64,000 bases of DNA from IMGVR_UViG_3300023313_000001:62001-126000, one strand, 5' to 3'. Positions 30,690 through 44,921 are shown, counted from the first letter of the stretch. Program-made: numbers and translations. The notes: generated by a model from the sequence alone, not told the origin.

Positions 30690-31601
30690 ATGAGAAAGCT
30701 GACGACTGAAGAGTTTATAGCTAAAGCTGATGTCACACACCATGGCAAGTACATTTACGACTCAGTAGTATACACTAAAAGTACATCAAAAGTCGCTATA
30801 ATATGTCCAAAACATGGAACGTTTAATCAACGAGCAAGTGCACATTTGCATGGGAGTGGATGTTTGGAATGTGGTGGATGTAAACAGAGTAGTACTACTG
30901 AGTTCATTGCTAAATCCGAAGTAATTCATTCAAATAAATACAATTATACTCTAACCAAATATATCAATACTCATTCTAAAGTGAATATTACATGCGATAT
31001 CCATGGAACATTCAGTCAGAGACCTAACGACCATCTAAAGGGGAATGGATGTCCTCAGTGCTGTGCTAATGTCAAATTGTCTACTTCAAGCTTCATTACC
31101 AAATCTCGTCAAGTACATGGAGATAGATACGATTACAGTAACTCAGTATATCAATCCAACAGTTCACCCATTATCATTACCTGTTCCATTCATGGTGATT
31201 TCCTTCAACGACCCAGCGTGCATTTGGACGGATGTGGCTGCTCATACTGCAATAAAGTTGGAGGATATAGTAAAGAAAAACTCACATCATATCTGACGTT
31301 AGGGCAACGAATGGGAAGTTTGTACCTGGTGTTGCTCTCCAGTAACGACGAACAGTTCTACAAAGTTGGGATATCCTCCACTGTTAGTCATAGGTTAACA
31401 TACATGTCTTCTACATATACTGTTGAGACAATTAATATAGTTAATATGATGCTAATAGATGCATTCAATCTGGAGCAAAAAATATTATCAATGTTCACTC
31501 CATACTATCCTACTAACAAATTTGGTGGCCACACAGAATGCTTGGTGTTAACCGATGATGATGTAACTAACGTTATGAAGATAATGACCTGTTATGCTTA
31601 G
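30690..31601 (+). CDS. free-standing homing endonuclease-like protein, family A (3 repeats)
   Basis: Three ICPKHG.F.QR...HL.G.GCxxC repeats; LYLVLL...FYKVGIS...HTEC. Confidence 0.75.
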   Translation: MRKLTTEEFIAKADVTHHGKYIYDSVVYTKSTSKVAIICPKHGTFNQRASAHLHGSGCLECGGCKQSSTTEFIAKSEVIHSNKYNYTLTKYINTHSKVNITCDIHGTFSQRPNDHLKGNGCPQCCANVKLSTSSFITKSRQVHGDRYDYSNSVYQSNSSPIIITCSIHGDFLQRPSVHLDGCGCSYCNKVGGYSKEKLTSYLTLGQRMGSLYLVLLSSNDEQFYKVGISSTVSHRLTYMSSTYTVETINIVNMMLIDAFNLEQKILSMFTPYYPTNKFGGHTECLVLTDDDVTNVMKIMTCYA

Positions 31602-31647
31602 ATTTTTTCAGTTTGGTGGATTATTATAATTAACAATCACCCTCGAT

Positions 31648-31655
31648 TATAAATA
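31648..31655 (+). promoter_or_regulatory. T4-like late promoter
   Basis: TATAAATA upstream of the fibre/collagen operon. Confidence 0.7.
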
Positions 31656-31715
31656 TAGATACTGCTCATAACTAATGGAGCAATTTCAATCTTTTAACTA
31701 AGGGGTATTTCAAAA

Positions 31716-34628
31716 ATGATTGTAGACGGTATTAATCTCATCGATGGGGTGATCAAGAACGCTGCTGTAGAATCCGGCATAACTCTTCCGCTCACTAACC
31801 TAGATACAGGACGTTTATTTTATCTGTCACAAATTGACGGGATTCATTCCCCAGGTCTGTACGTGTACAATGGTACTGATTGGGAAACATCTGGTCAAGT
31901 TGGCGATATTACTGGCGTAGTTGCTGGTACAGGATTAACTGGTGGTGGTAACACTGGATCAGTTCAATTAGATATCGACCCAGCGGTCGTTGCTACTATT
32001 GCAGTAACAGATAATTTAAATTCAACAAAAGTGAATAAAACAGGGGATCTCATGTCTGGAGCGTTAGACATGGGTACGAACGGAATTGTCAACCTATCAA
32101 GTCCCACATTGAGTACGGATGCTGCTAATAAGCAGTATGTTGATGCTGCATTGGGTACAGTGGATTTATCAGGTAAAGTTAGTATAGCTGGCGATACCAT
32201 GACAGGATTTTTATGGTTCCAGGCTGGTGTTGGATTGTATTGGTCGGACAGTAATTTAACAGTGCTACCAGATGCGAGTAGTGCGGGAGGCTTAGTCGTT
32301 GCTACCAGTGTAGCAGCAGCGATTCACCGGTTTGTCGTAGCTGGGGTGGACACTCTGAAAATATCACAAACTGCTGTTACTGTGGCTCCAGGAGTAGACT
32401 TAATATTAAATACAACTCCTGTATCAGATCAACATGCAGCAAATAAATTATACGTCGATAATGCTGTACTTGGGGTGGATTTATCATCACGAGTTGCAAA
32501 AACTGGCGATTCCATGACTGGGTCATTATCGTTTCAATCAGGTACTGGTTTATCTTGGCCATCAAACAGTGTGACATTGTTGCCTGATGGTGGTTCCGGT
32601 TTGGTAATTTCAACAAACTCAGTAACAGCTTCTCATAAATTTGCGGTGGGTGGTTCCGTTCAAATGGCCATCTCGTTAACTGACGTGTCATTAGCTGCTG
32701 GTGTGAGTCTTACGCTTGCACAAGATCCTACACTAAACCTACAAGCTTCGACAAAGCAATACGTTGATAATGCAGTGCTAGCAGTAGATCTATCGTCACG
32801 TGTGGCTAAAGCTGGTGATGCAATGACAGGCAGTTTGAGTATGGGTACCAATAGTGTGAGCTTTACAGGTGTTGGTGCTGCGGGGGTTGGTGGAGAGCTT
32901 TCCTTTGTAGGGGCTTCAACTACAGTATACGCTCCGTCTGTGGCTGGAGGTTTGACGTTTGACGCGCCCGCAACTGGATCATTCGTCAATGTAGTCAATG
33001 CTAATGCTATCACTACAGTTGATACTGGCGGATTAACTATTAACTCAGGGAATATTACACTAAATGCAGATCCAACTCTAGCGTTACAAGCTGCTACCAA
33101 ACAGTATGTAGATGGTAGTGTGGTGAATATCACTGGTAAGGTGAATGTTGCAGGCGACACAATGACTGGTGCATTAATTCTTAATGCGGATCCTTCAGTT
33201 GCATTAGGAGCTGCTACTAAACAATATGTTGATGCTGCTGAAACAGCTAGCGTTACTAAAGCTGGCGACACAATGACTGGTGCATTAATTCTTAATGCGG
33301 ATCCTTCAGTTGCATTAGGAGCTGCTACTAAACAATATGTTGACAGTGGAATTGGAGGAATCAATTTATCAGGTCTAGTTGCTAAAGCTGGCGACACAAT
33401 GACTGGTGCATTGACGCTTAATGCTGATCCTATCAACGATTTACATGCTGCTACAAAAAGATATGTTGATGGTGTTGCTACAGGACTAGATGTAAAAGCC
33501 TCTGTGCGTGTAGCTACCGTTGCTAATATTACATTATCAGGAGCACAAACAATTGATGGCGTCGCTGTAATAGCTGGTGACAGAGTTCTTGTAAAAGATC
33601 AATCGATTGGATCACAGAATGGTATATATGATGCTGCATCTGGTGCTTGGATTAGATCTTCGGATGCCGATAATACCCCAGCTAATGAAGTAACGTCTGG
33701 AATGTTCACTTTTGTAGAAGAAGGTTTATTGAATGCGAGTTCTGGTTGGGCATTAGCGACTGCAGATCCAATCACATTGGATGTTACATCATTATCGTTC
33801 TCCCAATTTAGTGGAGCTGGACAAATTACCGCTGGAACGGGTATATCAAAATCTGGTGATACACTAAGTTTAGATACTGGCAACAGTAGAAACGTAGACC
33901 ACTCAACAATCGATATGATCGCTGGCACCGGTATGACTGGTGGTGGTACTATCACAGGTAACAGAACATTTAATGTGGTCGGTGGGAATGGTATTGTAGC
34001 TAACGCTAATGATATAGCATTGGATACAGGTAATGTTCGTAATGTATCTCACAGTGCTGTGTCTATAGTTGCTGGTAGTGGTTTATCTGGTGGTGGTGAT
34101 ATTACTGCATCCAGAACACTCAATATCGGTGCTGGGACAGGTATTACTGTAGCTGCTAATAGTATTGCGTTTGACACAATATTTGGTGATGCAAGATATA
34201 TTCAACAAGCTGAAAATGCTGCATCTGCTACCAAATTAAATACAGCACGCACCATTTCATTGGGTGGCGATCTATCTGGTAGTGCATCATTTGATGGAAC
34301 TGCCAATATTACGATCACAGCTACTGTAGATAATACTGGGACTTATACTGATAACAGAACTACTAATAAAACGTTAGTTAGCCTGGAGACTGTATTTGTT
34401 AATACCTCTGCCGGAATTCTAACAATGACGTTGCCAGGAGCTCCTACATTGGGAGATCAAGTTACTATCATAGATTTGAAAGGCACGTTTGGAACCAACA
34501 AATGTATTGTTGGTAGAAATGGTGGAGTTATCATGGGTCTAACACAAAACATGGATATTACTACAAATAACGCTAGTGTTACACTCATCTACAGTAATGC
34601 TGCTGATGGCTGGAGAATTAAGCAATAA
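31716..34628 (+). CDS. long fibre-like virion protein
   Basis: Repeated GDTMTG.L...A.K.YVD shaft units, GLDVKASVR domain, C-terminal domain resembling T4 gp34 N-terminal repeats. Confidence 0.75.
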   Translation: MIVDGINLIDGVIKNAAVESGITLPLTNLDTGRLFYLSQIDGIHSPGLYVYNGTDWETSGQVGDITGVVAGTGLTGGGNTGSVQLDIDPAVVATIAVTDNLNSTKVNKTGDLMSGALDMGTNGIVNLSSPTLSTDAANKQYVDAALGTVDLSGKVSIAGDTMTGFLWFQAGVGLYWSDSNLTVLPDASSAGGLVVATSVAAAIHRFVVAGVDTLKISQTAVTVAPGVDLILNTTPVSDQHAANKLYVDNAVLGVDLSSRVAKTGDSMTGSLSFQSGTGLSWPSNSVTLLPDGGSGLVISTNSVTASHKFAVGGSVQMAISLTDVSLAAGVSLTLAQDPTLNLQASTKQYVDNAVLAVDLSSRVAKAGDAMTGSLSMGTNSVSFTGVGAAGVGGELSFVGASTTVYAPSVAGGLTFDAPATGSFVNVVNANAITTVDTGGLTINSGNITLNADPTLALQAATKQYVDGSVVNITGKVNVAGDTMTGALILNADPSVALGAATKQYVDAAETASVTKAGDTMTGALILNADPSVALGAATKQYVDSGIGGINLSGLVAKAGDTMTGALTLNADPINDLHAATKRYVDGVATGLDVKASVRVATVANITLSGAQTIDGVAVIAGDRVLVKDQSIGSQNGIYDAASGAWIRSSDADNTPANEVTSGMFTFVEEGLLNASSGWALATADPITLDVTSLSFSQFSGAGQITAGTGISKSGDTLSLDTGNSRNVDHSTIDMIAGTGMTGGGTITGNRTFNVVGGNGIVANANDIALDTGNVRNVSHSAVSIVAGSGLSGGGDITASRTLNIGAGTGITVAANSIAFDTIFGDARYIQQAENAASATKLNTARTISLGGDLSGSASFDGTANITITATVDNTGTYTDNRTTNKTLVSLETVFVNTSAGILTMTLPGAPTLGDQVTIIDLKGTFGTNKCIVGRNGGVIMGLTQNMDITTNNASVTLIYSNAADGWRIKQ
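33153..33343 (+). repeat. 80-bp identical direct repeat, 111-bp period, in the fibre gene
   Basis: 33153-33232 equals 33264-33343; partial third copy near 33390-33412. Confidence 0.9.
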
Positions 34629-34640
34629 GGGAGCAGTGAT

Positions 34641-35438
34641 ATGAGTAATTGGTTAAGTTATGCACGATCTGGAAATAAAGGTGTCAAAGGAGCCAAAGGG
34701 GTTAATGGTGTCAAAGGAGCCAAAGGCTTGCTGGGAGATAAAGGAGATCCTGGAGACTTAGGTGTTTCTGGTGGTCCTGGTCCTAGTGGTGATATTGGGG
34801 TTCAAGGCGCTCAGGGTCCTGCTAATAATACAACAGGTCCACAAGGCGCTCAGGGTCCACAAGGTCCACAGGGTGGAATCGGTGCTCAAGGCGGGACAGG
34901 GGCAACTGGTCCCGTTGGTGCTCAGGGTCCGTTAGGTCCTGCAGGATCGCCAGGCCCAACAGGGTCAAAAGGAATCGCCGGTTCTACTGGTGCCACTGGT
35001 ACTAAAGGAAGTGCTGGAGGTGCTGGAGCAAAAGGTGCAGCTGGTCAGAAGGGCTCCACTGGAGTTACTGGTCCAGGAGGGTCTCAAGGCATTCAAGGTG
35101 CCCAAGGTGCCCAAGGGGTAGCAGGTCAGAAAGGTTCGATTGGAGCGACAGGGGCTGGTGGGTCTACCGGAGCTGTTGGTCAAAAAGGTGGAGCAGGTCC
35201 AACAGGTAACACTGGTGCTAAGGGATCTGCTGGTGCTAAGGGGTCGGACGGTCCAGCTGGAGCACAAGGTGCTCTTGGCATTCAGGGCGATCTAGGTGGT
35301 GCTGGTACGCCAGGGCCAAATGGTATTCCAGGAGCTACAGGATCGAAAGGTCAGAAAGGTCAGAAAGGTGCTCTTGGAGCTCAAGGGACTAAAGGGGCTA
35401 AAGGTCAGAAAGGTCAGAAAGGTGCCCCAGGTGTCTAA
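34641..35438 (+). CDS. collagen-like protein 1 (about 83 Gly-X-Y triplets)
   Basis: Continuous Gly-X-Y from residue 11 with a single NNTT interruption. Confidence 0.9.
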   Translation: MSNWLSYARSGNKGVKGAKGVNGVKGAKGLLGDKGDPGDLGVSGGPGPSGDIGVQGAQGPANNTTGPQGAQGPQGPQGGIGAQGGTGATGPVGAQGPLGPAGSPGPTGSKGIAGSTGATGTKGSAGGAGAKGAAGQKGSTGVTGPGGSQGIQGAQGAQGVAGQKGSIGATGAGGSTGAVGQKGGAGPTGNTGAKGSAGAKGSDGPAGAQGALGIQGDLGGAGTPGPNGIPGATGSKGQKGQKGALGAQGTKGAKGQKGQKGAPGV

Positions 35439-35464
35439 TATGAATAACACAGAAGGATATAAAT

Positions 35465-36670
35465 ATGAGTAATTTTGAAGATTTTAATTATAGAACTTCG
35501 GGCGTTATTGGTGACCAGGGAGTCGCTGGGGTTCTGGGTGCTAAGGGTACCAAAGGTACCAAAGGTACCAAAGGTACTAAAGGTGTTCCTGGAATAATTG
35601 GACCCAAAGGATTAAAAGGAGTTGCAGGCCCTCAAGGTGTTGTAGGTGTAAATGGGTCTACTGGGCCAGTTGGTATAGCCGGAGATATTGGTCAAATAGG
35701 TCCAACTGGTGCTACTGGTGCTACTGGTCCTACTGGGCCTGCCAGTGTTGTTACTGGTCCACCTGGTACGGTGGGAGCTGTTGGTCAGCCAGGAGATAAA
35801 GGAGCAGTAGGTGCTCAGGGACCAGTAGGTCCAACTGGTGCTACTGGTCCTCAAGGTGTGAAGGGGACCAAAGGGTTACCTGGTCCTGGAGGTCCTACCG
35901 GTGCTCAAGGCGCTCAAGGTTCTACTGGTGGAGTAGGGTCTAAGGGAAATAAAGGAACAGCTGGAGATAAAGGAAACAAAGGAACTACTGGAAGTAAAGG
36001 TGATAAGGGTGTACTTGGCCCTCAAGGGACTGCAGGATTATCAGGTCCGTCGGGAGCCACTGGATCTCAAGGAATTGCAGGCCCTCAAGGTCCAGCAGGT
36101 CCCAAAGGTATTAAGGGCATTAAAGGTATAACTGGATCCCCTGGAGCCACTGGGACACCAGGAGCCAAGGGTGCAAAAGGTCCTAAAGGAGCTCCTATAA
36201 TAGGAGATCCAGGAGCTCTAGGACAGAAAGGACAGAAAGGTGTAAAAGGACAGCCTCAAGGTGGGTTAACCGCAGGACAGACCATTTCATCTAATGTTGC
36301 AAACACAAATGCTGTGGTTGTATCAAACGTCACTTTCAATTCTAACGGGACTACAACGTTTGCACTTAACAGCAATGCGACTACACCTGGTCCTAACTGG
36401 ACAACCGATGCTGGTGGATCTGCATACAACATATCTTGGACTGTGGGAGCTGCAGTGGGTACACGCTCTCCTACATCTAACGCCAGCAATGTGTCAATGG
36501 CTGCATCACAAACGTTCAGTTCAACAGACACCCTCACAGGGGCAGTAGCTTCCACGTCCACATGGACTATCACGCTAACCCATGTATTGTCTGGAAATAC
36601 TCAAGTATGGACTGCAAACACATCTGCTGAAAAACTTGGTGGTGGTGGTGGTGGTGCAATAATATTATAA
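35465..36670 (+). CDS. collagen-like protein 2 (about 82 triplets + C-terminal beta-rich domain)
   Basis: Gly-X-Y with SVVT and II interruptions, then about 135 aa Thr/Ser-rich domain ending GGGGGGAIIL. Confidence 0.9.
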   Translation: MSNFEDFNYRTSGVIGDQGVAGVLGAKGTKGTKGTKGTKGVPGIIGPKGLKGVAGPQGVVGVNGSTGPVGIAGDIGQIGPTGATGATGPTGPASVVTGPPGTVGAVGQPGDKGAVGAQGPVGPTGATGPQGVKGTKGLPGPGGPTGAQGAQGSTGGVGSKGNKGTAGDKGNKGTTGSKGDKGVLGPQGTAGLSGPSGATGSQGIAGPQGPAGPKGIKGIKGITGSPGATGTPGAKGAKGPKGAPIIGDPGALGQKGQKGVKGQPQGGLTAGQTISSNVANTNAVVVSNVTFNSNGTTTFALNSNATTPGPNWTTDAGGSAYNISWTVGAAVGTRSPTSNASNVSMAASQTFSSTDTLTGAVASTSTWTITLTHVLSGNTQVWTANTSAEKLGGGGGGAIIL

Positions 36671-37296
36671 TGGGTATTATGTTGTTACAAAATGTGTTCA
36701 GTGATAGTGACTATGTGATTAGTTTAGCTGAACACATGGGATTTGAGCCAGCTCCAGTAATATCTCAATGTGTTACTGATGCTAGTGGGAATATACTTCC
36801 GATGAAAGATTTATTAGAGGTTAACCATCCAGATCCCTCATTCTTCAACGCAGATAAGGTGTTCATCCATCGAGGCAGTTCTGAGTTTGATGAAATTATT
36901 ACAGTATGTGACAACATATTAACAACAGTATTTTCTGAATACGATGTTGAACTAGTAACAGATGATTGGCCAGGGACATATAAGTTAGATTATGTTTCTG
37001 TTGTTAGGTACAATTGTGGTGGCTTTTTTCACAACCACTCAGACTTGCTAGTTCAACCAGGCGGGAATTTTCGGAGTTTTACAATAATTGCTTATATGAG
37101 CGATTTTGCGGGTGGTGATTTGGTTTTTGCAGATCATGATATTAAACTATCCCCACAGAAAGGAGATGTTGTAGTTTTTCCTTGTGGTGAACAATACAGA
37201 CACGAGTCTACTGTGGTTACTGAGGGGGTTAAATATGCTCTTACCTTATGGCCATTGGTAAACACAGAATTAAAATTAAAAGTAGGGACTAATTAA
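36670..37296 (+). CDS. 2OG-Fe(II) dioxygenase, prolyl-4-hydroxylase-like
   Basis: Intact HxD (HNHSD), distal His (YRHES), 2OG-binding Lys (GVKY), RY..GG.F and GGDLVF motifs. Confidence 0.85.
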   Translation: MGIMLLQNVFSDSDYVISLAEHMGFEPAPVISQCVTDASGNILPMKDLLEVNHPDPSFFNADKVFIHRGSSEFDEIITVCDNILTTVFSEYDVELVTDDWPGTYKLDYVSVVRYNCGGFFHNHSDLLVQPGGNFRSFTIIAYMSDFAGGDLVFADHDIKLSPQKGDVVVFPCGEQYRHESTVVTEGVKYALTLWPLVNTELKLKVGTN

Positions 37297-38078
37297 TGAG
37301 TAATTTAAATGATTTTTTAATCGCTGGAGCTAAAGGTGATATTGGTGCAGTGGGTGCTGTTGGACTTGTTGGACTTGTTGGTGGAATTGGAGACCTTGGG
37401 AATGGTGGCATTACCGGACCACAGGGATCTGCAGGTTCTCAAGGATCGATTGGTCCTCAGGGTTTGATAGGTGCTCAAGGTCCTCTGGGTGCTCAAGGTA
37501 TTAAGGGAGTTAAGGGGTTAAAGGGAACTGTCACTGGACCTAAGGGTAATAAGGGGTTTGTTGGAGGAGCAGGAGCTCCCGGCACACAAGGTCCTCAAGG
37601 CCCACAAGGAGCGAAAGGTGTTGCAGGAGCTATAGGTACAGTGGGTGCTGTTGGAGCTCAAGGTCCTACAGGTACTACTGGAGTAGCTGGTGCTTCTGGT
37701 GCAATTGGTGCAATTGGTGCTACTGGTGCTACTGGTGCTATAGGTACTACTGGTGGATTAGGGGCTAAAGGTGTTGCAGGAGTTAAAGGGACTAAAGGGG
37801 CTGCAGGAACGCCTGGGGCTAAGGGGTTGAAGGGAGCTAAAGGAGCTCAAGGTGGTCCTGGTGGCGCTGGAGCTAAAGGTCCAGATGGAGCTGTGGGATC
37901 TATTGGTATCACAGGGGCTATAGGAACTGCTGGTCCTCAAGGGGCTCAAGGACCTGTTGGTATAAATGGGTTAGGTGGACCACCTGGTACAAATGGTGCT
38001 ACTGGAGCATTTGGTGACAATCATATCGGGGTTAAAGGAACCAAAGGTCAAAAAGGTCAGAAAGGTATTACAGGTTAA
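37296..38078 (+). CDS. collagen-like protein 3 (about 82 triplets)
   Basis: Gly-X-Y from residue 11 with T and HI interruptions. Confidence 0.9.
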   Translation: MSNLNDFLIAGAKGDIGAVGAVGLVGLVGGIGDLGNGGITGPQGSAGSQGSIGPQGLIGAQGPLGAQGIKGVKGLKGTVTGPKGNKGFVGGAGAPGTQGPQGPQGAKGVAGAIGTVGAVGAQGPTGTTGVAGASGAIGAIGATGATGAIGTTGGLGAKGVAGVKGTKGAAGTPGAKGLKGAKGAQGGPGGAGAKGPDGAVGSIGITGAIGTAGPQGAQGPVGINGLGGPPGTNGATGAFGDNHIGVKGTKGQKGQKGITG

Positions 38079-38093
38079 CATCACACACGATTT

Positions 38094-38118
38094 AAAAGGT
38101 TCCATATGGAACCTTTTT
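38094..38118. terminator. bidirectional intrinsic terminator closing the fibre/collagen operon
   Basis: AAAAGGTTCC-ATAT-GGAACCTTTTT. Confidence 0.85.
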
Positions 38119-38133
38119 ATGTCTGATTCAAAT

Positions 38134-38162
38134 TTGACAATCTACGCGTAATATATTATACT
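38134..38162 (+). promoter_or_regulatory. sigma70-type early promoter
   Basis: TTGACA-17 nt-TATACT. Confidence 0.85.
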
Positions 38163-38192
38163 CAGTTTTTAATAATACACTGAGGAAATGAA

Positions 38193-38486
38193 ATGTCACA
38201 ACTTGAACACCATGGTTTAATTTTACCTAGCAGTCCTGAAGATCGAAAACGTTTGATGGGTGGAATAGACGAGATTATAAATTGTCTAGCTCAAATGAAT
38301 TCTCAACGAGAGGCCAAGAAAGAAATTATAGAGCATCTATACGAAGAATTTGGTATTGACAAAAAACTGTTAAATAAAGTTGCGGCAACTTTATTTAAGG
38401 ATAATTTTCAACAGGTTGCAGCTGAAAATGAAGATTTTGAATTGTTAGTAGAAACTTTGCGAACTAAACAACAAGCGTCTACCTAA
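38193..38486 (+). CDS. dsbA: T4 DsbA-like dsDNA-binding protein
   Basis: 97 aa helical protein with KEII..L.EEFGIDKK..NK.....F.DNF pattern typical of phage DsbA. Confidence 0.65.
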   Translation: MSQLEHHGLILPSSPEDRKRLMGGIDEIINCLAQMNSQREAKKEIIEHLYEEFGIDKKLLNKVAATLFKDNFQQVAAENEDFELLVETLRTKQQAST

Positions 38487-38493
38487 GTATATT

Positions 38494-38523
38494 GCAGGGT
38501 AATCATATTGCCCTGCTCTTTTT
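38494..38523 (+). terminator. intrinsic terminator
   Basis: GCAGGGTAAT-CAT-ATTGCCCTGC followed by TCTTTTT. Confidence 0.75.
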
Positions 38524-38541
38524 ATCTAACTGGAATACCCA

Positions 38542-39039
38542 ATGGCAACAGAGATTGAGCGGAAGTTTTTGGTTAGTTGTCCGGATAAGGTCACTCAATC
38601 TTGGCGACCACATCGTGATATAGTGCAGTGTTACACCACAGCTGCAGATGACGCGTGTTCTCGTATTCGTGCTTCCAGTATAACTACTAGAGGAATAACC
38701 ATACATAGCTTTACTACAACTCATAAAATACGTAAGACTGATATGACACGTACAGAGTTGGAACATGACGTAAGCATGTATATAGCACTTCAACAATTCC
38801 GCCAATCGCCCAATCCACTAATATATAAAACCAGATACCTAGTGCCATACAATGACTCACTACAGTGGGAGATTGATGTATTCCACGCAGATAATCATGG
38901 GTTAATCGTTGCAGAAATTGAACTGCCTCATGAATCATATCAATTAACTATACCATCGTGGATTGGTGATGAAGTGACTAATGATATGAAATATACTAAT
39001 GTTCAATTGAGTGGCAATCCGTTTTGTAACTGGGAATAA
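38542..39039 (+). CDS. CYTH (triphosphate tunnel metalloenzyme) domain protein
   Basis: EIERKF (ExExK), RIR, KTRY, WEIDVF, VAEIEL, KYTN. Confidence 0.88.
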   Translation: MATEIERKFLVSCPDKVTQSWRPHRDIVQCYTTAADDACSRIRASSITTRGITIHSFTTTHKIRKTDMTRTELEHDVSMYIALQQFRQSPNPLIYKTRYLVPYNDSLQWEIDVFHADNHGLIVAEIELPHESYQLTIPSWIGDEVTNDMKYTNVQLSGNPFCNWE

Positions 39040-39065
39040 ATATATCTTACTTAATTGGAGATATT

Positions 39066-39836
39066 ATGAAAATTCACAGTAAACAGTTCGGAGAAGGAAT
39101 CGTTCAAATAGAGACTGGTTCAGTTTTACCTAGAGGCACCCCATTTGACGATGGTCGAATATTTTTCCTCCAAGAGATTGTTGATAAAAATCCCAAAGGA
39201 TTTTACGTATACGATGCAACTAAAGCACGTTGGACGTTGATCAACGAACATAGAAGTTTAGAGTTGACACATGTATGTACTACTGATGGAATCACATATA
39301 GTCTAACTGCAGAAACTGGAGCCACTGGTAATACTTACGCAACAGTGGTGTTATCCCCTGATAACACTCATGCTAGAATTACTGTGAAGGGAAGTGGATC
39401 TGGTGAGGCAGAGGGGTTTATATTTAGAAATGCTGATATTGGACATGATGTGATTCGCGCTGATAATGAATCGTTTGAATGGATGGGTAATAAGGTGTGG
39501 CATGATAAAAATTTGCATCCCATCAAGTTTCAACCAAGAGAGCGTGCCATTGATGTAAGAGTAAATCACTTGGCTCAAGGTCAAGAAACTTTGTTTGTTA
39601 ATACTACTGCTGGTGAAATTATAGTGAAATTGCCTCATTTAATCACAGTAGGGGATCGAGTTACAATCATAGATGATGCTGGAACTTTTGGGGACATTAA
39701 TTGTATAGTTAATGGACGAGGCCAAAACATAAATGGAATGGGCGACGATTACATCCTAAACAAGAGCAACACAGCGTATACCTTCGTATATCAAAACGCT
39801 AATCGTGGATGGCGTGTTTTAAAGCAACTGAGTTAA
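39066..39836 (+). CDS. virion fibre-associated adaptor protein
   Basis: N-terminal module and C-terminal gp34-like domain both shared with ORF 31716; AATAAATA at 39035-39042. Confidence 0.6.
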   Translation: MKIHSKQFGEGIVQIETGSVLPRGTPFDDGRIFFLQEIVDKNPKGFYVYDATKARWTLINEHRSLELTHVCTTDGITYSLTAETGATGNTYATVVLSPDNTHARITVKGSGSGEAEGFIFRNADIGHDVIRADNESFEWMGNKVWHDKNLHPIKFQPRERAIDVRVNHLAQGQETLFVNTTAGEIIVKLPHLITVGDRVTIIDDAGTFGDINCIVNGRGQNINGMGDDYILNKSNTAYTFVYQNANRGWRVLKQLS

Positions 39837-39841
39837 TATCC

Positions 39842-39849
39842 TATAAATA
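39842..39849 (+). promoter_or_regulatory. T4-like late promoter
   Basis: TATAAATA upstream of the tail fibre gene. Confidence 0.7.
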
Positions 39850-39877
39850 CCTCATATGAAAATTTTGAGGTATTTAA

Positions 39878-42667
39878 ATGAAAATTGATGGTCTAAGTTT
39901 TATTAACGATAGTAGAATGACTGATGCTGTAGTAGAGTCTGGTACAACGTTACCTGTTGCTAACGCACAAGATAACGGTCGGTTGTTCTTCCTTACACAA
40001 ACTCAAGGAGCTAATACTCCTGGGTTATACCTATATAATGCAAGTAGTGTATCGTGGGCCATAGTCAATGATAATACTGCAGTTAATGCAGTAAATACAG
40101 ATACTCTGGACAATCTTGACAGCCTCGATTTCGTTCGGTCTACTGGCTTCGTAAATCAAATCATAAATGGTCAAAAAACATTGACTGGTAGATTAACTAG
40201 TGATTTGACAGTTGCTGGGGTAAATTACAGGGCATATGATACTGCCAACAATAACAGATTCGATATCTCAGTGACAACTGGATCCGCATCTAGTTCTGGA
40301 GCTTACCTAAATTCCACATGGAATACTGGTGGAACTGGTAATATACATCTCCAGTATGCTAGTAATACCAAATTAAAGATACACAGCACAGGCATAGATG
40401 TTACTGGAACTATCAGTGCATCTGAGCCCATCACAGTATCTTCTGCAAACGATTCCATGTTAAGGTTTAATGTTCCATCTGGAAGCGCCAATGAGTGGAG
40501 TTATATATCTTGGTACGGTTCTGATGGTGCTAGAGATTCGTACTTTGGAATTAATTCTGCTGGATTTCCTATATGGGCTAAGGACGGTGGTACTATTGTT
40601 ACATTATCAGATACCGGAATATCGATGACTGGTAACATCTCAGTTACTGGAGCAGTTGATGGTAGAGACATTGCTGTGGATGGTAGCAAATTAGATACCA
40701 TTGCATCCAGTGCAAATAATTACACTCATCCAAACTATTCTTCAACAAATCAATCATTAACAAACGATAACGTAGTGGGTTCCATAACTACAAATGCCAC
40801 TGGACATGTGACAGGAATGACCAATAGGCAGTTACTTCCTGAAGATTTGGGTGGAACTAGGCTGGTAACAGGTGGAGGAGGATGGGGAAGCTTCTTATCA
40901 GTTGGTGGTGGTGGTGTATCCTATAATCAAAGCAACAAAACAGGTCATATTCAGATCAAACTACCAGTTCTATGGTCTAGTCATATGCTACAGTTTCATG
41001 TGGACGTGTTCGATTATATAGCAGACAAGTTAGTATCCTTCCATATCGCAGGATATAACTATGCTGGGTCATTATCCTGGAACAGAACATCAGTTCACCA
41101 AACTGGTGGAATTAGTGACATTCCTGTATATTTTGGTGACGATGGAGTTAACGCCTGCATATGGATAGGATCTCCAGCGTATGTATGGCAGTATCCCAAA
41201 GTTATTATCAGAGATGTACTCGTAGGGTTTACTACGGTAACCAACGCTACCTGGAAAGATGGTTGGAGCGTGACTGTTAACACCACACCACGAATTACTA
41301 CTAATGTAACTCATTCTAACCCTCAAGGATTTGGTCCTCGTAAAACAGATACATCTGCATTTGCAGGTCCGGTGACTACTGTGGGCAAATTGACGGTGGG
41401 CACCGAATTATCTAGTCCTGTTATGTACACTGGGACTTCATCTTCTTCCAATGGTTATTTCTATTCTGATATTCCTGGAAGAACATCCTTTCGCAACGGA
41501 GATTTTTACATACAGAATACTGTTATTAACTCTTTTAACTATGCCACTAACCAGTATGTAGGTAACGTTAGTGGATCTACTATTAGATTTAGAGGAAACA
41601 CTTTAACTGCTGATAACTGGGGGATTAACACTAGTGGAGTAGCTACCTTTGCAGGAGCTATAGTTGGTGATACGATTAACGCAGGAGATGTTGCTGCAAC
41701 TGGTGGTGGTGTTGGATTGCAAATTAAATATAATGGTGCAGATATACTAAACTCATTTGGTGCGTCGTATTCTACTGGCGATACATTTATTGGGAGAGGG
41801 TTGCGTAGTTCAACTACGACTGCGGCTACATATACATCGACAACTGCAACTAATGCAACAAGAGGGTTAGTTGAAGTTAGCGACAAGATAATATTTAGGA
41901 ATGCACCAATTTCTAATGCTACTGTAGGTTCTGTTGTATCTACTACAGAAAGATTTAGAATTGATGCCAGTGGGAATTTGACCTTGACAGGGACTGTTGA
42001 TGGAAGAAATGTTTCAGCAGATGGCAGTAAATTGGATACTATAGCATCCAATGCAAACAACTATACTCATCCAAATTACTCAGCAACAAATATCAATACA
42101 TCTGGGGCGACGGTAGTTGACATTATTACAACAAATTCGACAGGGCATGTTACTACGTTAGGCACACGTACTTTAACAGCAGCAAATATTGGTGCAGCCA
42201 CTAGTGGTCATACCCATACTACAATTACCCCTGTGGATGAATCTGTGGACACAATTTGCTATCCTGCCTTTTTCAATACTGCTACTGGCAACCAGGCTAT
42301 TAAAACAGGTACAAATTTAACATTCAACGCTTCGTCAGGCCAGTTGACAGCTACTATCCTAAATAGTTCAGATAGAGCGCTAAAGAAAAATATAACTGAC
42401 TATGTCGGTTATACCACATCTGGGATCCAAGCAAAATTGTATGAGTTTAAAGATTCATCTAAAGGAGGCCCTGGGATAAAGGTAGGGTATATCGCTGATG
42501 AGGTTGAATTAGTCTTACCAGAGGCAGTATCTGGTACTCCAGGCAACCAAGCGGTGGATTATACGATGGTTCACACTACAAAAATTGCAGAGTTGGAACG
42601 TCTTGTGGAACGTCAACAACAACAGATAGACAATTTAATAAAGGTATTAAATGACTCAATTAACTAA
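39878..42667 (+). CDS. tail fibre with C-terminal intramolecular chaperone (peptidase S74)
   Basis: SSDRALKKNI cleavage motif, GYIADEV, terminal coiled coil; beta-rich shaft. Confidence 0.85.
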   Translation: MKIDGLSFINDSRMTDAVVESGTTLPVANAQDNGRLFFLTQTQGANTPGLYLYNASSVSWAIVNDNTAVNAVNTDTLDNLDSLDFVRSTGFVNQIINGQKTLTGRLTSDLTVAGVNYRAYDTANNNRFDISVTTGSASSSGAYLNSTWNTGGTGNIHLQYASNTKLKIHSTGIDVTGTISASEPITVSSANDSMLRFNVPSGSANEWSYISWYGSDGARDSYFGINSAGFPIWAKDGGTIVTLSDTGISMTGNISVTGAVDGRDIAVDGSKLDTIASSANNYTHPNYSSTNQSLTNDNVVGSITTNATGHVTGMTNRQLLPEDLGGTRLVTGGGGWGSFLSVGGGGVSYNQSNKTGHIQIKLPVLWSSHMLQFHVDVFDYIADKLVSFHIAGYNYAGSLSWNRTSVHQTGGISDIPVYFGDDGVNACIWIGSPAYVWQYPKVIIRDVLVGFTTVTNATWKDGWSVTVNTTPRITTNVTHSNPQGFGPRKTDTSAFAGPVTTVGKLTVGTELSSPVMYTGTSSSSNGYFYSDIPGRTSFRNGDFYIQNTVINSFNYATNQYVGNVSGSTIRFRGNTLTADNWGINTSGVATFAGAIVGDTINAGDVAATGGGVGLQIKYNGADILNSFGASYSTGDTFIGRGLRSSTTTAATYTSTTATNATRGLVEVSDKIIFRNAPISNATVGSVVSTTERFRIDASGNLTLTGTVDGRNVSADGSKLDTIASNANNYTHPNYSATNINTSGATVVDIITTNSTGHVTTLGTRTLTAANIGAATSGHTHTTITPVDESVDTICYPAFFNTATGNQAIKTGTNLTFNASSGQLTATILNSSDRALKKNITDYVGYTTSGIQAKLYEFKDSSKGGPGIKVGYIADEVELVLPEAVSGTPGNQAVDYTMVHTTKIAELERLVERQQQQIDNLIKVLNDSIN

Positions 42668-43319: not shown

Positions 43320-44918
43320 TTGAGTTATATTTCAGCTTGGAGAAAATTAAATGACGTGATAGTTTGGGAGCGAGATCCAGACGGGAAGCGTTATAAAACT
43401 ACCTACCCAGGAATATTTGAGTTTTACTCCAAACATGTAGGTGGTTCGTATGCCAATATATATGGTGACAACTTAATTAAACACGAATTTAAAACGTGGT
43501 TTGATATGCACTCAGCTAAAAAACAATTCACTGAACGAGCGGAATTGTTATATGAGTCAGACATATTACCAGAAATGAAAGTACTGTCAGAACACTATTA
43601 TCAGGCAGAACCTCCTAAACTTCACTATACACTGTGGGATATCGAAGTTGATTATGACCCATCCCTAGCATATGCAGATACAGCAATTGATAATGCAGTT
43701 GCTCCCATAAACGCAGTAGCAATACATCATAAATGGAGTGGTGAATCCATAGTAATAGCTGTTCCTCCACCATCATGGACTGGATCATTAAAAGAATCTA
43801 CCGAGAAACTTAGTGATCTAGCTACAGAAACCAATACAACTATACTACTAGTAGCAACAGAGGCAGATTTGATAACCACATTGTTGGATGAATTTGAGGG
43901 CTCTGATGTTATTAGTGGGTGGAATTCATCCTGGTTTGACACCCCATATTTAGCGAAACGAGTATTATCAGTGCTGGGACCAAAAGCGTTTAACCGACTA
44001 TCATTTGCTGGAGCAGGCAAACCTTCTTTTAGAACAGTTGAAGTTTTTGGACAAGAGCGTATTACAATCGATTTAAGTGGGCGCATTAGTTGGGATTACA
44101 TGGAACTGTTTAAAAAATTCGAAATGAATGAACGCCCATCATATAGCTTAGAGGCAATCTCTAATGAAATACTTCCAGACTTACCTAAGCTGGAATACGA
44201 CGGAACTTTGCATGAATTGTATAATAACGATTTCGAACATTTCATACGATATAATATTCGTGATACCGAAGTGTTGGCAGGGTTCGAAGATAAACTTGGG
44301 TATCTAGCATTAGCTAACGTATTGTACCATTCATCTTGTGGACAACCAAATCAGATCTTTGGGACCATACGGTTAGCTGATCACGCCATCATTAATTATT
44401 GTCACAACGAATTAAATCGTAAAGTTCCAGATTGGGACATGTATAAGCAGGATGGTCGTATTGCAGGTGCAATGGTACTTACCCCCCAAATAGGACTACA
44501 TCAGAATATAGGGAGTATTGATATCACAAGTCTGTATCCGTCTGCAATTAGATGTATTAACATATCTCCAGAAACTCTCATTGGACAAATGAATGGTACG
44601 TTAGATATGGATGATCGAGCTAAGCATTCTGCATGGGATAGTGTGTATCGTAGTGACACTAGGGATCCAATTACATTAATCTACGACAATGGGGTAGATG
44701 GGTGGTCCGGTGCTGAAACTCATACTGGAAAGGAATGGCAGCAAATTTTAGTTGATCGGAAGTGGGCAATCTCTGGATACGGAACAATATTCCGACAGGA
44801 TGTACAGGGAATGATTCCTGCGGTATTAACAGAGTGGTTTGGTCAACGCAAAAAATATAAAAAACTAATGGTAGAAGCAAAAGACTCAGCTGAAGCCATC
44901 CTCGATAAGTATCGATGA
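43320..44918 (+). CDS. polB: family B DNA polymerase, N-terminal part (3'-5' exonuclease + motif A); TTG start
   Basis: WDIEVD, SGWNSSWFDTPY, YNIRDTE, SIDITSLYPSAI, WFGQRKKYKK; AGGAG RBS. Confidence 0.92.
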   Translation: MSYISAWRKLNDVIVWERDPDGKRYKTTYPGIFEFYSKHVGGSYANIYGDNLIKHEFKTWFDMHSAKKQFTERAELLYESDILPEMKVLSEHYYQAEPPKLHYTLWDIEVDYDPSLAYADTAIDNAVAPINAVAIHHKWSGESIVIAVPPPSWTGSLKESTEKLSDLATETNTTILLVATEADLITTLLDEFEGSDVISGWNSSWFDTPYLAKRVLSVLGPKAFNRLSFAGAGKPSFRTVEVFGQERITIDLSGRISWDYMELFKKFEMNERPSYSLEAISNEILPDLPKLEYDGTLHELYNNDFEHFIRYNIRDTEVLAGFEDKLGYLALANVLYHSSCGQPNQIFGTIRLADHAIINYCHNELNRKVPDWDMYKQDGRIAGAMVLTPQIGLHQNIGSIDITSLYPSAIRCINISPETLIGQMNGTLDMDDRAKHSAWDSVYRSDTRDPITLIYDNGVDGWSGAETHTGKEWQQILVDRKWAISGYGTIFRQDVQGMIPAVLTEWFGQRKKYKKLMVEAKDSAEAILDKYR

Positions 44919-44921
44919 TTT

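What the first reader, a model, noticed from the sequence alone, without database searches (positions are those of the whole stretch)
34641..38078. Three collagen chains are length-matched, suggesting a heterotrimeric helix
Manual counts give about 83, 82 and 82 triplets. All three begin with a 10-12 aa MSN(W/F/L) leader and end their helix with GQK-GQK. Only chain 2 has a C-terminal globular domain. Independent paralogs would not be expected to keep equal helix length unless they co-assemble. Caveat: the short interruptions fall after triplets 17, 27 and 23, so they are not in register.
Basis: partly seen in the sequence, partly recalled or inferred. Interest (0 to 1): 0.7.

Follow-up and report, generated by a model that had tools for sequence, protein, structure and literature searches.

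The report
Phage three-chain collagen fibre operon
A large uncultured phage from a microbial mat has a late operon encoding three equal-length collagen chains and a prolyl-hydroxylase-like enzyme, and the way the chains' charges and breaks line up suggests one mixed three-chain collagen rod, which has not been described for viruses or bacteria.

Summary
The three ORFs hold 83, 82 and 82 Gly-X-Y triplets. All three have an MSN leader and a GQKGQK end. Only chain 2 has a C-terminal domain (137 aa).

A 2OG-Fe(II) oxygenase of the prolyl-hydroxylase type sits between chains 2 and 3, joined to both by TAATG stop/start overlaps.

Interior sequence identity between the chains is at shuffled level, so equal length is not left over from a recent duplication.

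I numbered each helix from its first Gly. On that numbering:
- The first breaks are the same kind in all three chains (4 residues in a 3-residue slot, then G-P). They lie at 51, 66 and 81, exactly 15 residues apart, so Gly phase matches again from 85 to 232.
- Chains 2 and 3 have their 2-residue break at the same position (232-233) and GQKGQK at 240-245.
- 12 of 14 X-position Asp have a Lys at i-2 in another chain, in one cyclic order (c3 to c2 to c1). In-chain, only 3 of 14 do. Rotation null P about 5e-5.

Ordinary collagen-like proteins keep this Lys-Gly-Asp code within one chain.

An ABC heterotrimer is therefore the best reading (about 0.55), but it is unproven. No relatives exist to test it, the last roughly 20 residues of chain 1 do not fit, and separate equal-length homotrimers remain possible.

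The parts
31648..31655 (+). TATAAATA, a T4-type late-promoter-like motif 60 nt upstream of the 970-aa fibre gene. Presumed start of the transcription unit.
   Evidence: The same motif precedes the 929-aa fibre gene at 39842. The count of this motif in the window is not above chance, so this is an inference.
31716..34628 (+). 970-aa fibre-like structural gene. Its stop lies 12 nt before the start of c1.
   Evidence: PHROG tail-fibre and virion-structural families. It shares an N-terminal module with the 929-aa and 256-aa proteins and a C-terminal module with the 256-aa protein.
34641..35438 (+). Collagen chain 1 (265 aa): 10-aa leader, 83 triplets, 2-residue tail, no globular domain.
34824..34835 (+). 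c1 break NNTT, followed by G-P (helix positions 51-54).
35465..36670 (+). Collagen chain 2 (401 aa): 12-aa leader, 82 triplets, then a 137-aa beta-rich C-terminal domain ending in six Gly and AIIL.
35744..35755 (+). c2 break SVVT, followed by G-P (helix positions 81-84).
36197..36202 (+). c2 second break II (helix positions 232-233), two triplets before GQKGQK.
36257..36667 (+). c2 C-terminal non-collagen domain (pI 5.4), with no detectable homologue.
36670..37296 (+). 2OG-Fe(II) oxygenase of the prolyl-hydroxylase type (208 aa). TAATG overlaps join it to the c2 stop and the c3 start.
   Evidence: PF13640 E 1.8e-14. The best solved relatives are collagen prolyl 3- and 4-hydroxylases.
37296..38078 (+). 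Collagen chain 3 (260 aa): 10-aa leader, 82 triplets, 1-residue tail, no globular domain.
37524..37535 (+). c3 break, read as GTVT followed by G-P (helix positions 66-69). Formally it is one extra Thr.
38022..38027 (+). c3 second break HI (helix positions 232-233), two triplets before GQKGQK.
38094..38118 (+). Perfect palindromic hairpin that runs into a T tract, 16 nt after the c3 stop. Presumed end of the operon.
   Evidence: Read. The consensus scan does not list it because its loop is too short for that scan.

Best explanation
The three genes encode the A, B and C chains of one heterotrimeric collagen rod. The rod would be about 250 residues long, roughly 72 nm, with a net charge near +48. 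It is made late in infection from a fibre operon, together with a dedicated prolyl-hydroxylase-like enzyme.

Shown by the sequence:
- The gene order is one unit: fibre gene, c1, c2, oxygenase, c3, hairpin.
- Stop/start overlaps couple c2, the oxygenase and c3.
- Helix lengths are equal.
- The leaders and the GQKGQK ends are shared.
- The break geometry and the cross-chain Lys/Asp pattern are as described below.

Inferred:
- The oxygenase hydroxylates Y-position prolines (6, 9 and 4 sites) on the unfolded chains.
- The chains then pair 1:1:1 with their first Gly residues level.
- Composition and register are set inside the helix itself by 12 Lys(Y, i) to Asp(X, i+2) salt bridges running c3 to c2 to c1 to c3. 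Half of them lie in the first 42 residues.
- Each chain carries one 'four residues in a three-residue slot' bulge. The bulges are stepped 15 residues apart, so no level has more than one disturbed chain.
- The finished rod carries a single acidic beta-rich head, the C-terminal domain of chain 2, at its far end. The three short MSN leaders dock it on the virion.
- The function is probably a host-adhesion fibre or whisker.
For: (1) Lengths are 83/82/82 triplets, although interior identity is at shuffled level, the c1/c3 collinear segment lies at an offset of 10 triplets and 9-nt tandem repeats are abundant. Length has therefore been kept through compensating insertions and deletions.

(2) Counting residues from the first Gly, c2 and c3 have their second break at the same position (232-233) and GQKGQK at 240-245. 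The sums differ: 76 triplets + 4 in c2 and 77 triplets + 1 in c3.

(3) The first breaks share the pattern x-x-[T/V]-T then G-P. They start at 51, 66 and 81. Each shifts phase by +1, so all three Gly phases match over 0-51 and 85-232.

(4) Salt bridges were counted by the published rule: i to i+2 for leading-to-middle and middle-to-trailing, i to i+5 for trailing-to-leading (PMC11923368).
- ABC registers c3,c2,c1 and c1,c3,c2 each give 12 bridges. This is the top score among all 27 ways of filling the leading, middle and trailing positions. Homotrimers give 4, 3 and 2.
- Triplet shuffles give a mean of 3.9 and a maximum of 10 in 20,000 trials.
- The rotation null gives P(>=12) = 5e-5.
- Sliding the chains by up to +/-20 triplets ranks zero shift 2nd of 1681.

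(5) In 120 metagenomic collagen-like proteins, in-chain K-G-[D/E] is 4.2-fold enriched, and a median of 60% of X-position acidic residues have their own chain's Lys at i-2. In the trio this is 3 of 14 in-chain and 12 of 14 cross-chain.

(6) Operon structure and translational coupling.
Against: - Every characterised prokaryotic or phage collagen-like protein is a homotrimer (review PMC8968730).
- c1 and c3 have no chain-selection domain of the kind animal heterotrimers use.
- All three chains are strongly basic (pI about 10.2), so there is no overall charge complementarity.
- After position 232, c1 has no 2-residue break. Its Gly phase and its final GQKGQK (244-249) no longer match c2 and c3.
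- The Lys/Asp test rests on only 14 Asp. It was devised after looking at the sequences, and 3 of the pairs come from one run of Lys. Per-pair rotation P values are 0.01, 0.04 and 0.19.
- Between 55 and 84 the chains cannot all be in canonical phase.
- ESMFold2 builds a c2 homotrimeric helix without difficulty (ipSAE 0.38, best control 0.00; 21 of 30 known pairs and 0 of 23 single chains reach the mark; partner pLDDT 45-47; run agreement at least 63%). The chains can therefore at least be modelled as homotrimers.
- No relatives exist to show co-variation.
Confidence: 0.55

Rival explanations
1. The chains form three separate homotrimeric fibres of equal length. Each chain trimerises with itself, all dock by the common MSN leader at equivalent virion sites, and all must reach the same distance. 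Only the c2 fibre carries a three-headed tip. c1 and c3 are bare basic rods that act as spacers, struts or non-specific adhesins for anionic surfaces.
For: - Homotrimers are the rule for all known bacterial and phage collagens.
- In a homotrimer every break is automatically in register.
- ESMFold2 models a c2 homotrimeric helix (score 0.38, best control 0.00; 21 of 30 known pairs and 0 of 23 single chains reach the mark; partner pLDDT 45-47; run agreement at least 63%).
- A 137-aa beta-rich domain after a collagen stalk is the layout of BclA and C1q-type trimeric heads. A weak language-model lead points to BclA_C (score 0.76).
- Shared leaders and ends would be expected for fibres with common partners.
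Against: - As homotrimers the chains would have only 4, 3 and 2 Lys-Asp bridges. That is composition level, whereas comparable proteins show 4.2-fold enrichment.
- This reading gives no reason why the Asp of one paralogue should sit two residues after the Lys of another at zero shift (P about 5e-5).
- It gives no reason why c2 and c3 should agree to the residue at 232 and 240.
- It gives no reason why the first breaks should be stepped by exactly 15 residues.
- c1 and c3 lack any trimerisation domain, which known homotrimeric collagens normally have.
- Trimerisation of the C-terminal domain was not supported: the modelled interface covers only residues 215-264.
Confidence: 0.28
2. The chains assemble promiscuously or in another stoichiometry. 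Because the leaders and ends are alike, the chains mix into several trimer species (AAB, ABB and so on), giving fibres with 0 to 3 heads. Equal length is kept simply so that any mixture has flush ends.
For: - There is no chain-selection domain.
- The termini are near-identical (the c2 and c3 leaders are 86% identical over 21 nt).
- Several two-chain combinations score 8-9 bridges, which lies between the homotrimers and ABC.
Against: - ABC in one cyclic order is clearly the best (12 against at most 9), and the reverse order scores only 4. This points to one preferred composition and handedness.
- Gene order and translational coupling suggest equimolar synthesis.
Confidence: 0.1
3. There is no functional coupling. 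The three genes are paralogues that happen not to have changed net length, and the Lys/Asp pattern and break spacing are coincidence or relics of an ancestral in-chain K-G-D code.
For: - There are only three genes and 14 informative Asp, and the statistic was chosen after inspection.
- Two columns (Asp at helix positions 4 and 22) are shared by two chains each, which hints at some retained positional homology.
Against: - Positional identity at zero offset is at chance, and the one significant collinear block is displaced by 10 triplets. Indels did occur and were compensated.
- A relic model predicts in-chain pairs as frequent as cross-chain ones, yet in-chain counts are 1, 1 and 1 against 5, 5 and 2.
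- The rotation and sliding nulls preserve clustering and still place the observed register in the extreme tail.
Confidence: 0.05

Closest known systems
Complement C1q (A, B and C chains)
   Same: Three different chains, each with a short N-terminal segment, a collagen-like region and a C-terminal domain of about 135 aa, co-assemble into one triple helix. Interruptions differ between chains, for example a single inserted Thr in one chain (from established knowledge, not tested here). Chain 2 has the same three-part layout.
   Different: In C1q all three chains carry a gC1q head that drives heterotrimerisation, and disulfides link the N-termini. Here only chain 2 has a head, there are no cysteines, the helix is three times longer, and no homology of the head to gC1q was detected.
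Collagen IX (alpha1, alpha2, alpha3), a FACIT collagen
   Same: It is an ABC heterotrimer of length-matched chains in which only one chain carries a large extra globular domain.
   Different: Chain selection and stagger in collagen IX are set by the non-collagenous NC2 domain (cited in PMC8968730, and PMC11923368). The phage chains have no such domain. The extra domain is N-terminal in collagen IX and C-terminal here.
Designed ABC collagen heterotrimers directed by axial Lys-Asp pairs (Gauba and Hartgerink 2007; Fallas et al. 2009, as cited in PMC11923368)
   Same: Composition and register are encoded only by cross-chain Lys(Y) to Asp(X') axial pairs, with no folding domain. That is the pattern found here (12 cross-chain pairs against 2-4 in homotrimers).
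   Different: The designs are peptides of about 30 residues with one acidic, one basic and one neutral chain. Here the chains are natural, about 250 residues long and all net positive, with sparse Asp and with interruptions.
Bacterial and phage homotrimeric collagen-like proteins (Scl2, BclA, E. coli prophage EPclA)
   Same: They have Gly-X-Y stalks in surface or tail fibres, Lys-rich Y positions, and breaks used as hinges. PHROG tail-fibre families match through the collagen part.
   Different: They are homotrimers with their own trimerisation domains (PMC3368898; PMC8968730) and an in-chain K-G-D/E code. Other phage arrays of tandem collagen genes have very unequal lengths, and each gene has its own C-terminal domain.
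Viral collagen-modifying enzymes (Mimivirus L230 lysyl hydroxylase/glycosyltransferase; chlorovirus prolyl 4-hydroxylase)
   Same: A virus encodes both collagen-like substrates and a 2OG-Fe(II) hydroxylase (PMC8968730).
   Different: Those are giant viruses of eukaryotes. Here the enzyme lies inside the collagen operon of a bacteriophage. It has Lys at distal-His+10, as the Bacillus anthracis P4H does in the alignment. Its substrate has not been tested.

Membership tests
Collagen triple-helix repeat proteins (PF01391) | Long uninterrupted Gly-X-Y runs that match the Pfam model above its cut-off | tested here: met
   E 6.7e-34, 1.4e-34 and 1.3e-29 against a cut-off of 27.2 bits. There are 83, 82 and 82 triplets.
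Collagen triple-helix repeat proteins (PF01391) | The chains actually fold into a triple helix | tested here: inconclusive
   ESMFold2 places residues 215-264 of three c2 copies in a mutual interface (score 0.38, best control 0.00; 21 of 30 known pairs and 0 of 23 single chains reach the mark; pLDDT 45-47; run agreement at least 63%). This is a model, not a measurement. Imino-acid content is low, with 15-27 Pro per chain.
Heterotrimeric (ABC) collagen | Helix lengths matched between different chains | tested here: met
   Helix spans are 253, 252 and 249 residues. c2 and c3 are identical to the residue up to positions 232 and 240.
Heterotrimeric (ABC) collagen | Inter-chain stabilising pairs favour the mixed trimer in one register over homotrimers | tested here: met
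   ABC gives 12 bridges against 2-4 for homotrimers. It is the best of 27 compositions. Rotation null P 5e-5, and zero shift ranks 2nd of 1681 slidings.
Heterotrimeric (ABC) collagen | Gly phase compatible along the whole helix | tested here: inconclusive
   All three chains are in phase over 0-51 and 85-232. Phase is mixed over 55-84. c1 is out of phase with c2 and c3 after 232.
Heterotrimeric (ABC) collagen | A non-collagenous chain-selection or trimerisation domain on the chains (as in collagens I, IV and IX and C1q) | tested here: not met
   c1 and c3 have only a 10-aa leader and a 1-2 residue tail. Only c2 has a domain, and its oligomeric state is undetermined.
Heterotrimeric (ABC) collagen | Physical co-assembly of the three chains | not testable with these tools
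   This needs co-expression, native mass spectrometry, or cross-linking or cryo-EM of virions.
Collagen prolyl hydroxylases (2OG-Fe(II) oxygenase, PF13640) | Double-stranded beta-helix domain matching the family, with His-x-Asp, a distal His and a basic residue 10 positions later | tested here: met
   PF13640 E 1.8e-14. The motifs H-S-D, then H, then K at +10 can be read in the translation. They are aligned with prolyl 3-hydroxylase 1 (E 0.002) and Bacillus anthracis P4H (E 0.15).
Collagen prolyl hydroxylases (2OG-Fe(II) oxygenase, PF13640) | Hydroxylates Pro in Gly-X-Pro of these chains | not testable with these tools
   The only support is context: the gene is translationally coupled between c2 and c3. 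Lys is far more common than Pro at Y (18-25 against 4-9), so lysyl hydroxylation cannot be excluded.
C1q/TNF-like or BclA_C trimeric head | Sequence or fold match of the c2 C-terminal domain to gC1q or BclA_C | tested here: inconclusive
   There is no Pfam hit and no homologue among 1.84 billion representatives or in the word-index search. The AF2 model has pLDDT 39.6 with 8 strands. The only lead is a weak language-model match to BclA_C clusters (score 0.76).
Phage tail fibre | Homology of a non-repeat domain to a known fibre, or demonstrated presence in the virion | tested here: inconclusive
   PHROG tail-fibre hits run through the collagen repeats only. Support comes from context: the flanking fibre-like genes and the late-promoter-like motif.

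The most novel reading that the evidence does not exclude
This would be a natural ABC heterotrimeric collagen with no folding domain, encoded by a bacteriophage. Chain composition and register would be written only in the helix itself. The elements are a cyclic cross-chain Lys-Asp code, one four-in-three bulge per chain stepped by five triplets, and residue-exact length matching. The rod would be matured by a hydroxylase encoded in the same operon and would carry a single head on one chain.
Probability: 0.5. Interest if true: 0.85.

Novelty: new variant of a known kind. Interest (0 to 1): 0.72.

Why it matters
[quoted passage not shown] Heterotrimeric collagens are hard to make recombinantly, because animal ones need large chain-selection domains and designed ones are short peptides.

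A natural 250-residue ABC collagen that selects its partners and its register through the helix itself would be the first viral or prokaryotic heterotrimer. It would also be a ready-made scaffold for recombinant heterotrimers.

It would offer a clean test of the recently proposed Lys-Gly-Asp/Glu 'folding code' (PMC11923368), because here the code appears to have moved from within a chain to between chains.

A collagen hydroxylase inside a phage fibre operon would be of interest in its own right.

For phage biology, it would mean a fibre with a single, asymmetric receptor-binding head on a trimeric stalk.

Tried and rejected
Searches for relatives all failed, so the question of whether lengths co-vary in relatives could not be addressed.
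- Megablast of 31000-40000 against phages found only a 39-nt chance match.
- tblastn with c1 found nothing, because the repeat is masked as low complexity.
- tblastn with the oxygenase found only cyanophage oxygenases, about 35% identical over 85 aa and not next to collagen genes.
- The search for related loci with the oxygenase, c2 and the polymerase found no true relatives.
- The seven c2 hits are generic collagen genes of other architectures.
- The word-index protein search found nothing for the c2 C-terminal domain, only the oxygenase itself, and only generic collagens for c3.
- An exhaustive HMMER search with the C-terminal domain gave 0 hits.
- Leader-plus-GXY DNA patterns found nothing related in viral contigs or metagenomes.
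- A looser pattern found an unrelated family of collagen arrays with an MSNTFVY leader.
- The nearest isolates by polymerase (Xoo-sp13, CM1, RsoM2USA and XacN1, 38-41% identity) have no collagen genes.

Structure and assembly.
- AF2 on the C-terminal domain gave an unusable model (pLDDT 39.6), so no fold search was run.
- The single complex-prediction job went to c2 x3, to ask whether the head trimerises. It confirmed only the helix.
- An ABC-versus-homotrimer comparison was not possible with one job, and its controls (unrelated proteins) would not separate the two.

Ideas rejected.
- One gene broken into three. Each ORF has its own start, ribosome-binding site and leader.
- Recent duplication or gene conversion. 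There are no long shared DNA stretches.
- The TATAAATA at 35458 as a promoter for c2. It overlaps the c2 start codon.

Other.
- Tandem collagen paralogues from other loci gave no comparable cross-chain saturation, but they are too heterogeneous to be a strong control.
- Only assembled contigs are held for the source run, so population indel variation could not be assessed.


Full report
**Where the window comes from.** The window is bases 62001-126000 of a 229.5-kb viral contig that CheckV rates about 65% complete. The contig was assembled from a microbial-mat metagenome. It encodes topoisomerase II subunits, ribonucleotide reductase, a DnaB-like helicase, a DsbA-like late regulator and a split family-B polymerase. 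The polymerase is closest, at 38-41% identity, to jumbo myoviruses of Xanthomonas, Stenotrophomonas and Ralstonia. None of the four checked has any collagen gene. The phage has no close relative in any collection searched.

A mechanical count gives the following.

| Chain | Coordinates | Length | Triplets | Layout |
|---|---|---|---|---|
| c1 | 34641-35438 | 265 aa | 83 | 17, NNTT, 66 |
| c2 | 35465-36670 | 401 aa | 82 | 27, SVVT, 49, II, 6, then 137 non-collagen residues |
| c3 | 37296-38078 | 260 aa | 82 | 23, T, 54, HI, 5 |

- All three chains start MSN, followed by an aromatic or hydrophobic residue, and all end the helix with GQKGQK.
- PF01391 matches all three strongly.
- The genome holds no other substantial collagen gene.
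- Independent Logan contigs at depth about 125-160 reproduce the region without a single mismatch or indel, so the lengths are not assembly artefacts.

**What else lies in the interval.** Between c2 and c3 lies a 208-aa 2OG-Fe(II) oxygenase (PF13640, E 1.8e-14).
- Its closest solved relatives are collagen prolyl 3-hydroxylase 1 and Bacillus anthracis prolyl 4-hydroxylase. These matches are weak but specific.
- The His-x-Asp, distal His and Lys at +10 motifs are all present.
- Its start overlaps the c2 stop, and its stop overlaps the c3 start, both as TAATG.
- c1 starts 12 nt after a 970-aa fibre-like gene, and c2 starts 26 nt after c1.
- A T4-type TATAAATA motif lies 60 nt before the fibre gene.
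- A perfect hairpin running into a T tract follows c3.
- Next comes a near-consensus sigma-70-type promoter for the dsbA-like gene.

The unit therefore reads: late promoter, fibre gene, c1, c2, hydroxylase, c3, terminator. It sits in a cluster of fibre-like genes that share N- and C-terminal modules.

**Equal length is not inherited sameness.**
- At equal triplet index the X/Y identity between chains is 0.17, 0.14 and 0.16. Shuffled triplets give 0.135 +/- 0.025.
- The only ungapped block beyond the shuffled range joins c1 triplets 19-48 to c3 triplets 29-58. That is an offset of 10 triplets, yet the two ends of these chains align at offsets 0 and -1.
- The genes contain many perfect 9-nt tandem repeats, which favour slippage.
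- They share no long DNA stretches apart from 21 nt of the c2 and c3 leaders.
- Insertions and deletions of several triplets did occur, and their net effect was cancelled. This indicates selection on total length.
- For contrast, other phage contigs carry tandem arrays of collagen genes with similar short leaders. Those genes have 43 to 258 triplets, and each has its own C-terminal domain.

**New evidence for a shared register.** I numbered each helix from its first Gly (c1 residue 11, c2 residue 13, c3 residue 11) and counted break residues in the numbering.

1. c2 and c3 have their 2-residue break at the same positions (232-233) and GQKGQK at 240-245. Up to that point c2 has 76 triplets plus a 4-residue break, and c3 has 77 triplets plus a 1-residue break.
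2. The three first breaks are one motif, x-x-[T/V]-T followed by G-P. In c1 it is NNTT at 51-54, in c3 GTVT at 66-69, and in c2 SVVT at 81-84. Each puts four residues into a three-residue slot. They are spaced exactly 15 residues apart and each shifts the Gly phase by +1. After the third break all three chains are in the same phase again, up to 232. The breaks look like deliberately staggered single-chain bulges, comparable in kind to the single-chain interruptions of C1q (from general knowledge).
3. The helices contain no Glu and no Arg. They hold 16 Asp (14 at X positions) and 64 Lys (all at Y positions).

**The salt-bridge count.** I used the published geometric rule: Lys i to Asp/Glu i+2 from leading to middle and from middle to trailing, and i to i+5 from trailing to leading (PMC11923368).
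- The in-register mixed trimer in the cyclic order c3 to c2 to c1 makes 5 + 5 + 2 = 12 bridges.
- The reverse order makes 4, and homotrimers make 4, 3 and 2.
- ABC in this order is the top of all 27 ways of filling the leading, middle and trailing positions.
- The matched pairs are spread from position 2 to position 230 and cross the breaks.

Three nulls were run.
- Triplet shuffles: mean 3.9, maximum 10 in 20,000 trials.
- Rotation of each chain, which keeps clusters intact: P(>=12) = 5e-5.
- Sliding the chains by up to +/-20 triplets: zero shift ranks 2nd of 1681, and the best is a one-triplet shift of c1.

As a reference, I took 120 metagenomic collagen-like proteins chosen for similarity to c3.
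- In these, in-chain K-G-[D/E] is 4.2-fold enriched over composition.
- A median of 60% of their X-position acidic residues have their own chain's Lys at i-2.
- In the trio, only 3 of 14 do so in-chain, which is composition level, while 12 of 14 do so across chains.

The usual collagen salt-bridge code thus appears to have moved from within a chain to between chains. That is the signature used to design ABC heterotrimers.

**Limits of that evidence.**
- The test was devised after inspecting the sequences and rests on 14 Asp.
- Three c1 Asp are served by one run of Lys in c2.
- Per-pair rotation P values are 0.01, 0.04 and 0.19.
- Between positions 55 and 84 the three chains cannot all be in canonical phase.
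- After 232, c1 has no 2-residue break, so it is one residue out of phase with c2 and c3. Its final GQKGQK lies 4 residues later.
- All chains are strongly basic (pI about 10.2, net +14 to +19), so there is no overall charge complementarity.
- c1 and c3 have no chain-selection domain.

**The C-terminal domain of chain 2.**
- It has no Pfam match and no homologue in two very large protein searches.
- Its AF2 model is unusable (pLDDT 39.6, eight strands).
- There is only a weak language-model resemblance to BclA_C-type heads (score 0.76).
- It scored 0.38 against 0.00 for the best control. In the tool's calibration this mark was reached by 21 of 30 proteins solved as pairs and by 0 of 23 single chains. 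Partner pLDDT was 45-47 and the runs agreed in at least 63% of contacts.
- The confident interface covers only residues 215-264, which is the collagen part.
- Whether the head trimerises is therefore undecided. If it did, that would favour a c2 homotrimer.

**Most likely mechanism.**

Shown:
- operon structure and translational coupling;
- equal lengths with compensated indels;
- shared termini;
- stepped breaks of one type;
- exact register between c2 and c3;
- a cross-chain Lys/Asp code in one cyclic order.

Inferred:
- The hydroxylase modifies the unfolded chains. Y-position Pro is the conventional target. Lys cannot be excluded, because it is 3-4 times commoner than Pro at Y.
- The chains then pair 1:1:1 with their N-terminal ends level. 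Half of the bridges lie in the first 42 residues, which suggests that nucleation or registration starts at that end.
- The product is a basic rod of about 72 nm, with one acidic head from c2 and three short leaders for docking. It serves as an adhesion fibre or whisker.

**Confidence across the readings.**

| Reading | Confidence |
|---|---|
| ABC heterotrimer | about 0.55 |
| Three separate equal-length homotrimers | about 0.28 |
| Mixed stoichiometries | about 0.10 |
| No functional coupling | about 0.05 |

**Comparison with what is known.**
- In how it works, the trio is closest to designed ABC heterotrimers directed by axial Lys-Asp pairs, and to C1q and collagen IX among natural proteins.
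- By membership, the chains are collagen-repeat proteins (met), and the enzyme is a P4H-type 2OG oxygenase (met by sequence).
- The trio does not meet the animal-heterotrimer criterion of a chain-selection domain.
- It differs from all described bacterial and phage collagens, which are homotrimers with in-chain codes and their own trimerisation domains.
- I rate it a new variant of a known kind. It is of high interest if the heterotrimer is confirmed, and it is directly testable by co-expression.

Noticed in passing
window 43320-48439: The family-B DNA polymerase is in pieces. The N-terminal part lies at 43320-44918. A 630-aa homing/HNH endonuclease ORF follows at 44922-46814. The C-terminal part at 46766-48439 also carries an intein splicing domain (PF14890).
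   Followed up: partly
window 31716-34628, 39066-39836, 39878-42667: Three fibre-like proteins share an N-terminal module of about 54 aa (52% and 37% identity). The 970-aa and 256-aa proteins also share a C-terminal module of about 78 aa (46% identity). The 929-aa protein ends in a Peptidase_S74 chaperone domain. One of these modules may be the docking site for the collagen leaders; this was not tested.
   Followed up: partly
window 38134-38486: A DsbA-like transcription regulator (PF11126, phrog_639) lies behind a near-consensus sigma-70-type promoter (TTGACA, 17 nt, TATACT), immediately after the collagen operon's hairpin.
   Followed up: no
window 38542-39039: A 165-aa ORF begins MATEIERKFLV. 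It matches phrog_6660 (unknown function) and has no Pfam hit. From memory the N-terminal motif resembles CYTH/triphosphate-tunnel enzymes; this was not tested.
   Followed up: no
window 35728-35834 (inside c2): One low-depth Logan contig (depth 6.9 against about 150) skips 105 nt of c2, including the SVVT break. Only 26 nt lie on its shorter side, so it may be a repeat artefact or a rare deletion variant.
   Followed up: no
loci L025, L026, L028, L031, L032, L035 (IMG/VR contigs): This is an unrelated family of tandem arrays of 2-4 phage collagen genes. They have 10-11 aa leaders (MSNTFVY..., MANSFVY..., MATPFTY...). Each gene has its own C-terminal domain of 100-270 aa, and triplet counts are very unequal (43-258). 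Short leaders directly before Gly-X-Y seem to be a recurring module of phage collagen fibres.
   Followed up: partly
G000:C1:189250-191094 (outside the window): A 614-aa ORF has two short Gly-X-Y runs that flank repeated beta-rich segments. It is the only other collagen-like signal in the contig, and it scores below the Pfam cut-off.
   Followed up: no
window 36637-36667 (end of c2): The c2 C-terminal domain ends with six consecutive Gly (a perfect TGG x 6.7 DNA repeat) followed by AIIL. This looks like a flexible linker with a short hydrophobic tail, possibly a plug for a partner.
   Followed up: no
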